Positions 49,926 through 55,486 of a stretch of 64,000 nt of DNA are shown piece by piece. The stretch is from Botryllus schlosseri. Taxonomy: Eukaryota. The translations under genes and the position numbers were made by a program. The stretch spans positions 11,966,001 to 12,030,000 of the forward strand of contig CM119384.1 in assembly GCA_051294905.1 (NCBI GenBank), read 5' to 3'. Within the stretch, counting starts at the first letter, position 1. The number at the start of each line of letters is the position of its first letter. Below the pieces are notes generated by a model. It ran no database searches. It was not told where the DNA came from and saw only the letters and a list, made by a program, of their open reading frames with translations.

Positions 49926-49975
49926 CGGATAAAATAGCAAATCCTTGATCCCGCGAACGGGTGTCTTTGATTTGT

Positions 49976-50234
49976 ACATGTCGCCAATGTCGCCAATGTC
50001 ACCAATGTCACCAATGTCGCCAATGTCGACGTCTATCTATTTTGTCAATGTCGCCAATGTCACCAATGTCGCCAATGTCACCAATGTCACCAATGTCGGC
50101 AATGTCACCAATGTCGGCAATGTCACCAATGTCGGCAATGTCACCAATGTCGGCAATGTCACCAATGTCGGCTATGTCACCAATGTCGCCAATGCCGACA
50201 TTGCCGACAATGCCGCCATTGCCGATAATACCGA
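49976..50234 (+). repeat. 9-nt satellite (TCACCAATG/TCGCCAATG/TCGGCAATG) in the left arm
   Basis: Direct reading; mirrored at 53640-53872. Confidence 0.95.
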
Positions 50235-51130
50235 CATCATCATCATCATTGGTTTATTAGCAATTTTATCAGTTCAATACACCACAAAAAATGCGATACA
50301 ATGAAAAGAAAGGAAGATGTCGAAGCGACTAGGAGTTGTCTATGGAATCGGACACCCACCTTGGCCTAGGCGATGTAAAGAGGAGGCATGCACACTGAAT
50401 GAAAGTAAAGAAGATAGTACAGAAAAAGGAAGCGACAAGAAATAGGGCGGCATGTCATGGCCTCATGGGAAGCGAGATCGATAGGTCAGTCGTGGTCCGG
50501 TAATCTTGAGGATGTACTGTATTTATTCAGTTGTAATTGCTTGTATTTCGACTTGAATGTGGACAACTGGACATGCTCGTCGACTGCCTGATTGCCGGCG
50601 AGATACTGTTCCACACATCAGGTCCGGCATATTTGATAGAGCGATGATCTTTTCGGTCGATCATATGATATTTGGACGACGTGGACGCGCGTGTGTTGTA
50701 CTTGTGCGCTTTTGATTCAGAGGTAAAGAAGTCATTGAAGTATTCGGGGCAACGACCGCAGTGAAACTGATACATAAACTTGGCGATTTCTAGTTTCCGC
50801 ATATCTTCTATGTTTAGGACGCCGAATCTCTTCAGCAGCGACTTATTGGATGGGCAGCCAGGCCCCTTTTGGGCCCTAGCTATGATTCGGAGTACTTTAT
50901 GCTTTAGTTTCTGCAGTGGCTTGAGTGCAGTTTTACTGGCAGCCCCCCAACAGAGGATGCCACAATGTAACTTCGATTGGATTAAGGATTTAAAGAGTAT
51001 CAGAAGAACCCATGCTGGCATGAAGCGCCCAAGGCTGTAGAACAGGCCGCACTTCGGTGATAATTTAGTTTCTAGGGACTGAATATGACTCTTCCAGGAC
51101 ATGTTCGAGTCCAGTAAAATCCCCAGATAT
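50235..51130 (-). mobile_element. 5'-truncated CR1/L2-group LINE (RT C-terminus, 3' UTR, (ATG)n tail) inserted in the left arm
   Basis: YLGILLDSNMSWKSHI...LIQSKLHCGILCWG...YAGPDVWNSISPAIR; tail reads (CAT)5 on +; absent from the right arm. Confidence 0.92.
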
Positions 51131-52464
51131 TTGCCGACTATGCCGCTCGGGGGCCGAAACTAGGATACTGTAATGACTCAAGGATTTTTGGTGACTCGAC
51201 TCGACTTGAATCAATCTTGGTATTGACTTGACCTGCACCCGGCTACTCAAGTACTTCGACTATCTCGCTACATACTACGCGATTCTTGACGGGAAGACCT
51301 GAAGATTGCATGGCCACAAACGCAAATTATTTATAACTAATCATATTATTTACATTATTAGGCCTGTTGAATTCAATAAACGTCGAAGTCTTTATACATT
51401 CCAGTGTTAGATTTGCTATGAAAATGGAAGTATTTTGTTTTTCATTTCATTGACATGATAACGACATCAATATCCCGACCGTTTTACCAGGATGCTGTGC
51501 GTCTATTGAGCACGTAACTCCAAACGCTCTAACGGTAGTTATCGTGACGGTTTCCGCCTGTACGACTCTTATCCTCCTGAAATCACGTTTCAAGATTTTC
51601 CGAACATTCTCAATTGATACAAACGTTGGGGTGATATACCATTGCTTATGGACAAGCAGAAATCCAGCGAATTGCGGATGACGATAGGTATTCTTGCCGA
51701 TCTTTGTCAGATAACCCTATCCTACCGCCGGGCATGATGGTCAATAGCAATTGGTGATGTTTGATCTGTTGACGAATGTTGAAACAGACAAACAGGTGAA
51801 CCCACTTCGTGATTCTGAAAGGTCCTCTTTGATCCCGATCCGGGACCGAACTCGAAAACTATATGATTCAGTCCATTTAGGGATACCCTACTCCTACTAT
51901 TGCAGAGAAGATTACGATTATGACGATACTGTAGGGTGATCGATTCAGGAGACTCTCTGACTGGTGGTTATCCAACTCAATATTAAAGAAATATTGTTAT
52001 GCGGATGCGCCAATTGGTAGCACATAATCAACCGTTTATAATGGACTTATTCGTTTATATGATGTACCGCTGGAGATGACCGGAATACCGACGTTCGAAA
52101 TGTATTTAACCAAATCATATCAGATATTTTTGATTTGACTCACAGCAGTTAGGTTTAAATTAGGTTATAATTAGGGCGATTTTTTTTTGACATGTCAAAA
52201 TAAGGTCAAAATTCTAGCGTTTGGCCAAAAAATGTCAAAATTGTTTACAAAGACAAGATTTTTTTGCAACCTGCATTTCATTTGTATCGTAGACTTATTT
52301 GCACAATCGGTGAACTTATAATTTGACATTTTACAGCTTGTAGCCTACTTTATAGGCCTACCGTTGCAGACAGCGCATTGTCTGCTCACTGTGAATCATA
52401 AACAGTCAAATGAAATAAATAGGTTGACACGATGTTATGCTCAACGTACCGCAATATCCTAAGT

Positions 52465-52650
52465 CAGTGGTTCTCAACCTGGGGGGCGCACCCCCCTTAG
52501 GGGGGTGAAACATCTGAAGGGGGCGCGAAGAAGCTGTCAACTGAAAAACGAATATAAAAAATCACGATTCGGTTATCAAATATCTTGCAAATTTAGAGGC
52601 TTCGCGGACCCCCTGGAAATGCTTCGCGGACGCCCGGTTGAGAACCACTG
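52465..52650. mobile_element. Short Charlie-like hAT MITE (186 bp) inside the Foldback element
   Basis: TIR CAGTGGTTCTCAACC...GGTTGAGAACCACTG; degenerate TSD TCCTAAGT/TTCTAAAC. Confidence 0.85.
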
Positions 52651-53639
52651 TTCTAAACGTTATGTTTTAGCATTAGCGGATATCAATTAGGCTAGGCCTA
52701 CCCCAATTACGGTTTGAGGCGAACCGCGCAGATTCGATGTTATTCAGTTTCAAGATGTCACTCAACTTATTCAACGGTAGAGTTGATGGAGAGGGCAAGT
52801 GAATGACGTGTCCACGGCCGCACAAATTTCCTTCTATGACCGCTGGTTGGCCACCCCTGGTTTACATGAATGTCATGGCGAGGAGGAGCCTAGATAAACC
52901 TCCAAAACATTAGGTAGGAATAGCAAGAAGTCTAGATAAACCTGCAACACTTAGGTAGGAATTCTGGAGCCAACCTCGGTCAGCCCCCCTCTGTGTAGGA
53001 GTATGGATGATATGGAAATTTCAAATCAAGTACCTTCCCAAGTGAATAGTATATTGATATTAAAATGAACCCGAATATTTTCAGCTGACACTCGTCATTT
53101 TGATAAAAGTTGGCCTCTACCGTCAACACGATATCTTTCGTCTTCTCGCGCTCACAACAGTCAAATGCCATAAACATTTGTTAGATAATCTTGCTTGCTC
53201 GAAAAATAATCGAGGTGACAGGTTTCTTGTATTCGGGAGACGCAGTCCACACTTCATTTGGGGGCCTTGGAGTCAAATGATAAGTTCACAGACAGAGCAC
53301 TATCTGACACCAATGGAATGCGAAATAGTGTACAGCGTACCTACGCCCGGTCGTGTATTTTCCTCGCGAATCCTACACTGGAATATATAAAGACTTCGAC
53401 GTTCATTCAATTCAACGTATAGGCCTAATAATGTATATAATATTAGATATAAATAATTTGCGTTTGTGGTCATGCAATCTTCAGGTCTTCCCGTCAAGAA
53501 TCGCGTAGTATGTAGCGAGATAGTCGAAGTACTTGAGTAGCCGAGTGCAGGTCAAGTCAATACCAAGATCGATTCAAGTCGAGTCAAGTCACCAAAAATC
53601 CTTACTCGAGTCATTACAGTATCCTAGTTTCGGCCCCCG

Positions 53640-53872
53640 AGCGGCATCGTCGGCAATGTCGGCAATGGCGGCATTGTCGGCAATGTCGGCATTGGCGACA
53701 TTGGTGACATAGCCGACATTGGTGACATTGGCGACATTGCCGACATTGGTGACATTGGCGACATTGGTGACATTGGTGACATTGGCGACATTGGCGACAT
53801 TGACAAAATAGATAGACTTCGACATTGGCGACATTGGTGACATTGGTGACATTGGCGACATTGGCGACATGT
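53640..53872 (-). repeat. 9-nt satellite in the right arm
   Basis: Reverse complement of the left array, including the same GTCTATCTATTTTGTC interruption. Confidence 0.95.
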
Positions 53873-54127
53873 ACAAATCAAAGACACCCCCCGCGAACTG
53901 AGAGCCAGCGGTGTATGTATTATTTATCTATTGATGAAGTATATTTTGCTATCGAAATCATGAAATAAGGAAGCAGTTGCGAATAGCGTAATCATATTTC
54001 ATTATTAATCAAAAGTTTAGTCAGTGGAGGGTGAACGCGAGAAAGAGTTGATACCGTACGGTATCGCTTCCGCGTTATACCGATATAGGTCCGGTCCGCC
54101 TGTATGGAATCGGTGTCCTGTCCTCAC

Positions 54128-55486
54128 CAGAGTTGGATCAATTGTAATTTGTAATGTAATTGAATGTAATTAATTACATATTTCAATGTAATTGTAATGT
54201 AATTGTAATTGAAGCATTTTTATTTTGTGTAATTGTAATTGTAATTTGACAAAAATTTTGCTCAATTACAATTTAATTACATTAAATTGCTATTGAGACC
54301 TGACAAGCACAACATAAAATAATTTTTTTTACCGCTATGCTGGCCTCGGCTGCCATTGTATACAATTATTAGATTACTAACCAACGGATGGATTCGCAAC
54401 ACGTGACTCACGATTGAATACGCCGAGAAGCGAACTGCTGAGCCGGCTAAAAGCAGCAGGATTGATAGTCCCATAGCTAACGATCCAAGCGTCGAAATTT
54501 GATATGTATGGTCCTAATCGAAAGCTAGTGTCGCACAGTTTCCGCAATAAAAGTATATTTCCAGGCAATGGTACCATCCCAAAATAGTCGTGAAAGTCTG
54601 GGAATCGGCATTGTTCTGAACAATCGCTGGGAGCAATTGGTCATTGTTGTGGTCATGCTGCTGCGGCGCTCTCACTTTTCAGAACAGTCGGCCTTAAACG
54701 GCTATTTTGGAGCAGTTACATTGCCCTGACGAGATTTTAATTTGTATTTTCGGAATTAGTGCATCAATAGCTTACGATAAAGACCAGATGCATCAAATTT
54801 GGACGCCTGAATCGCCAGCTCTAGGACTATAAAGTTTGCTGCTTTTAGCCGGCTCTGCAGTACGTTTGTCGGTGCATTCATCCGTTGCTCACATCTTGCG
54901 CATCTATCCGTGGGTTGGCAATCTACAATACGATTTCAGATCACGATGATGCATCGTTACTTCGTCTGTCCAACTAACCAGACCACTTGATATTATATAA
55001 CGTCTTATCTGACAAAGCACGGTTTTGTTTTCACCCCTCATCCTAATTCCTACGTCCCTCGATAAAAATAATATTATTTCTTTAATTATATATTATATAC
55101 GCAAATCCAACCCGTGCATGATTACAATACTTTTTTCAACGACATACTGCATACTGGAATAGTTCGAAAACGTTTTTCTTTTATTAATTACCGGGTATTT
55201 GCGTATCATGAATGAAACATGAATACTTGAATTGTTGTTAATTACGACGCTACGGTTGTCAAGGAGCACGGTTGAATTTATCATTATTCAATTACATGTT
55301 CAACAGTTGTAACAACAATTGTAATTGTAATTGTAATGTAATTGAGACATGCAAGGAGTAATTGTAATTGTAATTTGATATTTTTAGCATGGAGTAATTG
55401 TAATTGTAATGTAATTATAACATGCATGAAAGTAATTATAATTGTAATTGTAATTGAACTGAAATAATGTAATTGATCCAACTCTG
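54128..55486. mobile_element. Non-autonomous hAT with (TAATTG)n subterminal arrays (1359 bp)
   Basis: TIR CAGAGTTGGATCAATT; perfect TSD GTCCTCAC (54120-54127, 55487-55494). Confidence 0.92.

What the first reader, a model, noticed from the sequence alone, without database searches (positions are those of the whole stretch)
49959..53889. 3.9-kb Foldback/MULE-like transposon with satellite-built arms and a 9-bp TSD
Seen: exact TSD CCCGCGAAC, G-rich termini, and ~550-bp inverted arms. Each arm is a short unique tip, a 9-nt array with a shared internal interruption, and a ~290-bp unique inner part. Array length differs between arms (about 260 vs 230 bp). Known: long modular TIRs plus a 9-bp TSD characterise Foldback elements of the Mutator superfamily. 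The 9-nt period equals the TSD length. No transposase is visible, so it is non-autonomous. This architecture is easily missed because the arms look like low-complexity ORFs. It may be an undescribed family.
Basis: partly seen in the sequence, partly recalled or inferred. Interest (0 to 1): 0.75.

Follow-up and report, generated by a model that had tools for sequence, protein, structure and literature searches.

The report
Defective Mutator-type foldback transposon copy
This is a real but ordinary 3.9-kb jumping gene of the Mutator (MULE) kind with repeat-built inverted ends. It has no enzyme gene of its own, and the larger relatives in the same genome that carry the transposase gene all have it broken.

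Summary
Window 49959-53889 has identical 22-nt inverted tips and is flanked by an exact 9-bp duplication, CCCGCGAAC. Each arm runs tip, 9-nt tandem array (260 vs 230 bp), then a ~290-bp unique inner part.

One correction: the left arm is split by an 893-bp, 5'-truncated LINE (50238-51130). A 186-bp hAT-type MITE also sits inside the element (52465-52650).

It is a true transposon family:
- The 495-Mb genome holds 86 such tips against 1 for the control, forming about 31 pairs.
- Of 11 pairs checked, 8 have exact 9-bp duplications, each of a different sequence.
- Array length varies from 75 to 383 nt between ends.
- A tip-like 18-mer is conserved in 42 of 46 ends.

Longer members of 9.4-29 kb with the same ends encode a ~1000-aa protein. 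It has a PHD-like finger, an OTU-like protease and a MULE DDE domain that passes Pfam's threshold, with D, D, CxxH and E conserved. All three near-identical gene copies are broken.

Muta1 and Tm1 are close published analogues, so this is a new member of a known kind. This scan has already noted other foldback MULE families, and apparently the autonomous copy, elsewhere in this genome.

The parts
49950..49958 (.). Left copy of the 9-bp target-site duplication, CCCGCGAAC
   Evidence: identical to 53890-53898.
49959..49980 (+). Left terminal 22-nt motif (tip), GGGTGTCTTTGATTTGTACATG
   Evidence: exact on both ends, 0 expected by chance; 86 genome matches at up to 2 mismatches, against 1 for the control.
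49978..50237 (+). Left 9-nt tandem array (about 27 units). The outer sub-array and the inner sub-array are separated by the 18-mer.
   Evidence: TRF: period 9, 27 copies; also a period-36 higher order; this arm has 4 more units than the right arm.
50033..50050 (+).
   Evidence: present with at most 3 substitutions (2 at most observed) in 42 of 46 family ends, almost always at element position 39+9n (one at 86; extra copies in L002). Candidate transposase-binding site (inference).
50238..51130 (-). Nested 5'-truncated LINE fragment with an (ATG)n 3' tail; not part of the transposon
   Evidence: 4389 first-look candidates genome-wide, 93-96% identical; its ORF is 69% identical (E 2e-99) to the C-terminal part of an ORF in L050; that ORF carries RVT_1 (E 1.5e-20); 32 other ends have the inner arm directly after the array.
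51131..51425 (+). Left inner unique part of the arm
   Evidence: pairs with 53357-53640.
51426..53356 (.). Internal non-coding region; a deletion derivative of the autonomous element
   Evidence: window 51295-51820 matches L034 1227-1757 at 95%, and 52651-52855 matches L034 8557-8761 at 97.6%. The region is nearly colinear with L050; no transposase match and no ORF over 96 aa.
52465..52650 (.). Nested 186-bp hAT-type MITE with CAGTGGTTCTCAACC inverted ends
   Evidence: the same ends bound an 840-bp insertion with an 8-bp duplication that splits the transposase ORF in L051; homology to other family copies resumes exactly at 52651.
53357..53640 (-). Right inner unique part of the arm
53641..53870 (-). 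Right 9-nt tandem array (about 23 units), including the 18-mer at 53798-53815
53868..53889 (-). Right terminal 22-nt motif
53890..53898 (.). Right copy of the 9-bp target-site duplication

Best explanation
Window 49959-53889 is a non-autonomous, internally deleted copy of a MULE (Mutator-superfamily) cut-and-paste DNA transposon with foldback-type ends. Each end has a 22-nt tip, a variable 9-nt subterminal array holding a conserved tip-like 18-mer, and a unique inner arm.

Inferred mechanism: it was mobilised in trans by the roughly 1000-aa PHD-like / OTU-like / MULE-DDE transposase encoded by 9-29-kb family members with the same ends. By analogy with Muta1, that enzyme would bind the tip and the subterminal repeats, excise the element, and insert it at a 9-bp staggered cut, which gives the CCCGCGAAC duplication.

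After insertion the copy was hit by a LINE, which split its left arm, and by a hAT MITE. All three near-identical transposase genes in the assembly are broken, so the family is probably no longer mobile on its own.

Shown here: the anatomy, the family, the TSDs, the MULE domain in members sharing these ends, and the nested insertions. Inferred: the binding sites, the cleavage chemistry and the present inactivity.
For: - Tips and TSD.
- Family size: 86 tips against 1 control, about 31 +/- pairs from 0.1 to 29 kb on at least 14 contigs.
- TSDs: 8 of 11 pairs are exact 9-bp duplications of different sequence, and the other 3 are near-exact.
- Modular ends are a family trait. The array before the inner arm is 75-383 nt long, differs between the two arms of nearly every copy, and carries the 18-mer in 42 of 46 ends at steps of 9.
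- L034, a 9.4-kb member with the same tip, array, 18-mer and inner arm, holds an ORF of about 1000 codons with 2 in-frame stops. L051 holds the same ORF split by an 840-bp hAT element.
- Domains: PF10551 MULE at 32.2 and 31.0 bits (threshold 27.6), OTU at E 3e-4, PHD at E 1.7e-3.
- Catalytic residues: D, D, CxxH and the NNxES-N glutamate motif are conserved with the database homologues P0001-P0003.
- The window copy shares the non-coding subterminal regions of L034 and lacks its ORF.
- Published analogues: Muta1 subterminal repeats strengthen transposase binding and cleavage (PMC5499845); Tm1 has variable tandem-repeat TIRs, 9-bp TSDs and a MULE transposase (PMC3169594).
Against: - No intact transposase of this family was found. 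The three copies at 95% identity or more are all broken, so trans-mobilisation is historical inference.
- The OTU and PHD matches in this family fall below Pfam's thresholds.
- The inner arms are only 86-91% alike, although the outer 100 nt are 99% alike.
- An empty site was not demonstrated.
- Repbase and Dfam could not be queried.
Confidence: 0.9

Rival explanations
1. The family belongs to the Rehavkus/NOF branch (PHD finger, 9-bp TSD, subterminal minisatellites) and not to canonical MULEs.
For: It has a 9-bp TSD, subterminal tandem repeats and a PHD-like finger. These match the Rehavkus description in PMC6446971 and the Tribolium preprint. Earlier scan notes report Rehavkus-like families in this genome (unchecked AI notes).
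Against: The Rehavkus reference rows in the supplement of PMC6446971 show D-(A/S)-T-G-S around the first aspartate and NAIERYF around the glutamate. This family instead has FDKTYNLG and NNNNESMNH, the canonical MULE pattern that Pfam's MULE model recognises. The PHD match is below threshold and is N-terminal. This is a motif-level comparison only.
Confidence: 0.12
2. The copy, or the family, is still mobile. It would be cross-mobilised by related intact transposases in the genome, and this insertion would be polymorphic.
For: Related families at 44-45% protein identity have several copies with uninterrupted 1014- or 1055-aa frames and identical scores. In run X15, another sample of the same organism, a 1077-nt contig matches 49260-49949 and then runs on for 118 nt that do not follow the reference. 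It departs exactly where the TSD begins.
Against: 44-65% identical transposases usually do not recognise foreign ends, and the ends of those families were not examined. No joint bridging 49949 to 53890 was among those listed, and the 118 letters were not seen. The copy is old enough to have collected two nested insertions, and it differs from its relatives by 5-9%.
Confidence: 0.2
3. It is a local inverted duplication or an assembly artefact, not a transposon.
Against: There are about 31 paired copies on many contigs with different exact 9-bp TSDs. An independent contig from run X1 crosses the left junction into the tip.
Confidence: 0.01
4. It is a Pack-MULE carrying a captured host gene fragment.
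For: The internal 1.9 kb is non-transposase sequence, and parts of it (52108-52463 and 52820-53175) are very high-copy in read contigs.
Against: The internal region matches the non-coding subterminal regions of the autonomous copy and of other non-autonomous copies. It has no ORF over 96 aa. The high-copy parts behave as interspersed repeats, not genes.
Confidence: 0.03

Closest known systems
Muta1 (Aedes aegypti), an active MULE and 'type 2 foldback' element (PMC5499845)
   Same: 8-9-bp TSD. The TIR consists of a short terminal motif plus a run of short subterminal tandem repeats (12 bp in 9 copies). It has a MULE DDE transposase with a C/DxxH motif. The repeats were shown to enhance binding and cleavage.
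   Different: Here the unit is 9 nt and is repeated far more often (about 6-40 units), in two sub-arrays around a tip-like 18-mer. The arms continue into a roughly 290-bp unique part, up to about 1.4 kb in the large copies. The transposase carries additional PHD-like and OTU-like domains. No activity has been shown.
Tm1 (Meloidogyne), a Mutator/Foldback family (PMC3169594)
   Same: Composite TIRs with a variable number of tandem repeats that differ between the two ends of one element. 9-bp TSDs without a consensus. MITE-like, non-autonomous and rare transposase-bearing members. The family is judged to be decaying.
   Different: Tm1 has asymmetric 7-bp terminal motifs, a 14-bp unit, and a 496-aa Phantom-type transposase without a protease domain.
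Rehavkus (Repbase group; PMC6446971 and bioRxiv 10.1101/2024.12.02.626372)
   Same: 9-bp TSD, long TIRs, subterminal tandem repeats, a PHD finger, and a large element size of 5-18 kb.
   Different: The motifs around the catalytic D and E differ from the Rehavkus reference rows. The PHD match here is weak. Homology to Rehavkus transposases could not be tested directly.
Drosophila Foldback (FB/FB-NOF)
   Same: Long inverted arms made of short tandem repeats, a 9-bp TSD, and mostly non-coding copies (from my own knowledge and from the citations within PMC3169594).
   Different: No sequence comparison was possible. Here the arms are only partly repetitive and have a well-defined conserved tip.
Protease-bearing transposases: Ulp1 in MULEs, OTU in Ginger1 and Helentrons (PMC2836005)
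   Same: A cysteine protease of the ubiquitin/SUMO-hydrolase type is fused to a transposase.
   Different: In that paper OTU is reported for Ginger1 and Helitron proteins, and Ulp1 for Mutator. Here, and in the database homologues P0001 and P0002, an OTU-like domain sits N-terminal to a MULE DDE.

Membership tests
Mutator/MULE superfamily | DDE transposase of the MULE type (Pfam PF10551) encoded by members of the same family | tested here: met
   32.2 and 31.0 bits against the 27.6 gathering score, in L051 and L034. Both share the window element's tip, array, 18-mer and inner arm.
Mutator/MULE superfamily | Conserved D, D, C/DxxH and E catalytic signature | tested here: met
   GFDKTYN, GTDNE, CLKH and NNNNESMNH align with the same motifs in P0001-P0003.
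Mutator/MULE superfamily | Target-site duplication of about 9 bp (8-11), variable in sequence | tested here: met
   8 of 11 pairs are exact 9 bp, one is 8 bp, one is 8/9, and one is 9 bp offset by 1 nt. All sequences differ.
Foldback-type elements ('type 2 foldback' as used for Muta1 and Tm1) | Long TIRs built largely of subterminal tandem repeats, with repeat number varying between arms and between copies | tested here: met
   arrays of 75-383 nt. The arms of a single copy differ by whole 9-nt units.
Drosophila FB/NOF lineage | Transposase homologous to the FB4/NOF proteins | not testable with these tools
   No reference sequence was available, and the 8 database homologues carry no such name.
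Rehavkus | 9-bp TSD and subterminal minisatellites | tested here: met
   definition taken.
Rehavkus | PHD finger in the transposase | tested here: inconclusive
   PF00628 at E 0.0017 and 18.8 bits, against a cut-off of 24, at residues 11-55.
Rehavkus | DDE-domain similarity to the Rehavkus reference transposases | tested here: not met
   Motif-level comparison only. The reference rows show D(A/S)TGS and NAIERYF, whereas this family shows FDKTYNLG and NNESMNH. No alignment score could be computed.
Pack-MULE | Host gene fragment captured between the TIRs | tested here: not met
   the internal region is family non-coding sequence plus nested repeats.
Autonomous element | Intact transposase gene in this copy | tested here: not met
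   none of the 80 genome matches falls in C14:12015959-12019889; there is no long ORF apart from the array ORFs and the LINE ORF.

The most novel reading that the evidence does not exclude
The autonomous partners of this element may represent a MULE lineage not yet described in the literature. Its transposase would fuse a PHD-like finger, an OTU-type deubiquitinase-like protease and a middle domain related to the CG-1 DNA-binding domain of CAMTA factors to a canonical MULE DDE.

The link to CG-1 is indirect: the middle domain is homologous to a triplicated domain in Mytilus proteins that Pfam calls CG-1. The word-based search of 5.8 billion proteins found only 8 relatives. If the middle domain reads the 9-nt array, this would be a new DNA-binding module for a transposase and a possible evolutionary link between CG-1 and mobile elements.
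Probability: 0.25. Interest if true: 0.45.

Novelty: new member of a known kind. Interest (0 to 1): 0.25.

Why it matters
Mostly for annotation. The arms mimic low-complexity coding sequence, and the element lies about 3.9 kb upstream of an intronless EXD3/mut-7-like ORF, so recognising it prevents false gene or promoter calls.

The family is also a clean natural series. There are 46 sequenced ends in which the subterminal array grows and shrinks by whole 9-nt units, while a tip and a tip-like 18-mer stay fixed. That series could be used to ask what a MULE transposase actually needs at its ends.

The OTU-bearing transposase adds a case to the recurring association of ubiquitin/SUMO proteases with transposases.

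Tried and rejected
As a result I could not fetch the flanks of the other roughly 20 pairs, the third transposase copy as a single locus, or the related intact 1014/1055-aa families and their ends.
- Pfam found nothing in the LINE fragment's own ORF. Its identity was settled through a related RT-bearing copy instead.
- A profile search of PDB sequences with the transposase alignment gave no hit at E up to 1.
- Pfam does not detect CG-1 directly in this family's middle domain. It appears only in two Mytilus homologues.
- The ESM Atlas returned only generic MULE clusters.
- Literature searches found no ascidian foldback paper and no paper describing an OTU-MULE fusion.
- Read laying showed no listed joint across the element. 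Most joints were not displayed, so the empty-site question stays open.
- The large representative-protein search was not run.
- No structure or complex prediction was run, since neither would change the verdict.
- Merlin, P and hAT superfamilies were considered for the 8-9-bp TSD and rejected, because the partner enzyme is a MULE DDE.
Full report
**Observation**

The sequence shows the 22-nt tip GGGTGTCTTTGATTTGTACATG at 49959-49980 and its exact reverse complement at 53868-53889. These are the only two matches in the window at up to 3 mismatches, with none expected by chance. The 9-mer CCCGCGAAC directly abuts both ends, at 49950-49958 and 53890-53898.

TRF reports 9-nt arrays at 49978-50237 and 53641-53870, and the repeat finder reports the long inverted arms. 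A global alignment of the outer arms gives 99 of 100 identical over the first 100 nt. The length difference consists of gaps of 9 and 27 nt, which are whole units. The inner unique parts, 51131-51425 and 53357-53640, also pair.

**One correction**

On the left side the array and the inner part are 893 bp apart. The intervening 50238-51130 is a separate, very abundant interspersed repeat, with 4389 first-look candidates and copies 93-96% identical across all chromosomes.

Its minus-strand ORF is 69% identical (E 2e-99) to the C-terminal part of an ORF in locus L050. That ORF carries a reverse-transcriptase domain (RVT_1, E 1.5e-20). The fragment ends in an (ATG)n tail at 50238-50252. In other family copies the same repeat always starts at that tail end and is truncated at different points. 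This is the signature of independent LINE insertions. In 32 other ends the inner arm follows the array directly.

A second nested element is a 186-bp MITE at 52465-52650 with CAGTGGTTCTCAACC ends. An 840-bp relative with the same ends and an 8-bp duplication interrupts the transposase ORF in L051, which points to the hAT superfamily.

**It is a transposon family**

A genome-wide pattern search (495 Mb, 219 contigs) finds 86 tips at up to 2 mismatches, against 1 for the reversed control. By my count from that table, they form about 31 +/- pairs, 0.1 to 29 kb apart, plus 24 solo ends.

For the 11 pairs whose flanks I hold:
- 8 have exact 9-bp duplications, all of different sequence and without an evident consensus.
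- 1 has an 8-bp match.
- 1 has an 8/9 match.
- 1 has a 9-bp match offset by one base.

This disposes of the inverted-duplication and artefact alternatives. A contig of run X1, probably the source sample, also crosses the left junction into the tip.

**Family anatomy**

I examined 46 ends.
- The tip is constant.
- The distance from the tip to the inner arm ranges from 75 to 383 nt, and it differs between the two arms of nearly every copy.
- That 18-mer nearly always sits at position 39, 48, 57, 66 or 75, so the outer sub-array changes by whole units.
- The 18-mer resembles the tip itself (TTTTGTCAATG against ATTTGTACATG).

A fixed tip, a fixed tip-like motif and expandable short repeats are what one expects of transposase-binding ends. 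That role is inferred, not shown.

**The enzyme**

Long members with the same ends carry a large ORF.
- L034 (9.4 kb) has about 1000 codons in one frame with two in-frame stops.
- L051 has the same ORF split by the hAT element.
- A third copy lies in a 29-kb composite.

The genome search with the protein finds only these three at 95% identity or more, and all are broken. It also finds related families at 60-65% and 44-45% identity, some with several copies bearing uninterrupted 1014- or 1055-aa frames.

Pfam places the C-terminal half in the MULE transposase family above the gathering score. It gives sub-threshold OTU (with the GDGNCFYRAIS motif) and PHD matches at the N-terminus. The two catalytic aspartates, the CxxH motif and the NNxES-N glutamate motif all align with database homologues.

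The word-based search of 5.8 billion proteins returned only 8 relatives, at 30-36% identity. Two of them, P0001 and P0002, also combine OTU (above threshold) with MULE.

The middle domain (residues 203-345 of the 570-aa piece) is homologous to a domain repeated three times in a Mytilus protein. Pfam calls that domain CG-1 in two Mytilus proteins (best E 1.5e-7). It is not detected directly in this family.

**The window copy**

It has no match to the protein. It shares the non-coding subterminal regions of L034 (95-98% identity) and is nearly colinear with the 5.3-kb copy L050. It is therefore an internal-deletion derivative, about 2.85 kb long before the two nested insertions. MULE-specific parts are 91-98% identical to other copies, so the insertion is not recent.

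**Mechanism**

Muta1 is a MULE whose 145-bp TIR is a terminal motif plus nine 12-bp subterminal repeats. Its purified transposase binds the ends, and more repeats give stronger binding and cleavage. Excision proceeds through hairpins on the flanking DNA, and TSDs are 8-9 bp (PMC5499845).

I infer the same scheme here, with the 9-nt units and the 18-mer as binding sites and a 9-bp staggered target cut. The equality of the unit length and the TSD length is most simply a coincidence, given Tm1 (about 14 and 9) and Muta1 (12 and 8-9).

**Comparison and membership**

The architecture is that of published Mutator/Foldback elements such as Tm1 and Muta1. Rehavkus is described with a 9-bp TSD, a PHD finger and subterminal minisatellites, and so resembles this family. 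However, the Rehavkus reference rows in the supplement of PMC6446971 show different motifs around the catalytic D and E from those seen here. I therefore file the family as a canonical MULE with foldback-type ends and leave Rehavkus as a minor rival. Homology to Drosophila FB/NOF proteins could not be tested.

In the literature I could search, OTU domains are reported for Ginger1 and Helitron proteins and Ulp1 for Mutator (PMC2836005). I found no paper describing an OTU-MULE fusion and none on ascidian foldback elements. Absence from this library is weak evidence.

**Possible polymorphism**

In run X15, another sample of the same organism, a 1077-nt contig matches 49260-49949 and then continues for 118 nt that do not follow the reference. 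The break is exactly at the first base of the TSD. That is what an empty-site allele would give. However, the bridging joint was not among those listed and I could not see the letters, so this remains a lead.

**Earlier notes of this scan**

These are unchecked AI notes.
- They call the genome a sea squirt's. I did not verify the organism.
- They report several other foldback MULE or Rehavkus-like families in it.
- One first-reader note describes a 9.4-kb 'PHD + OTU + MULE' element on another piece. That is probably L034, and it agrees with what I found independently.

**Limits**

- Repbase and Dfam are not available here.

**Verdict**

This is a real, well-formed but ordinary non-autonomous foldback-type MULE, and a new member of a known kind.

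Noticed in passing
window 50238-51130 (-); L050:1863-2969: Very abundant LINE family (4389 first-look candidates, copies 93-96% alike) with an (ATG)n 3' tail. It has inserted independently into several copies of this MULE family, each time truncated at a different 5' point.
   Followed up: partly
window 52465-52650; L051:2890-3737: hAT-type MITE with CAGTGGTTCTCAACC ends. An 840-bp relative with an 8-bp TSD splits the transposase ORF of the C11 copy. The window copy's own TSD is degenerate (5 of 8).
   Followed up: partly
L034:5914-6342 (residues 203-345 of the 570-aa piece): The middle domain of the transposase is homologous to a domain repeated three times in the Mytilus protein P0006 (E 4e-21 to 2e-16). 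Pfam calls this domain CG-1 in P0006 and P0007 (best E 1.5e-7). It may be a CG-1-like DNA-binding domain in a transposase.
   Followed up: partly
G000 C4:26209494, C5:5222611, C11:15305525, C12:26410655, C7:16378494 and others: Related MULE families at 44-45% protein identity. Several copies have uninterrupted 1014- or 1055-aa frames and identical scores, so they may be young and active.
   Followed up: no
window 49949/49950: A contig of run X15 (another sample of the same organism) leaves the reference exactly at the start of the TSD and runs on for 118 nt. This may be an empty-site allele.
   Followed up: partly
window 52108-52463 and 52820-53175: Stretches inside the element have contig depths 100-1000 times those of the MULE-specific parts, so they are pieces of other high-copy repeats. 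The second stretch is shared with other copies of the family.
   Followed up: no
window 54370-54547 / 54748-54925: Another inverted repeat in the right flank, with 178-nt arms 76% complementary and 200 nt apart. The region 54066-54590 is high-copy in reads, so this is probably another MITE-like element.
   Followed up: no
L048 (G000 C13:4042208-4049769): A 7.5-kb element whose ends carry a near-identical 22-nt tip (2 mismatches) but no 9-nt array behind it. It is a sister family that shares only the terminal motif.
   Followed up: no
L035-L045 (C11 15 kb, C13 29 kb, C16 24 kb copies): Large copies with the G8 tip variant have inverted arms extending to about 1.2-1.4 kb. These arms include sequence that in the window copy is present only on the right side (52651-53356).
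   Followed up: partly
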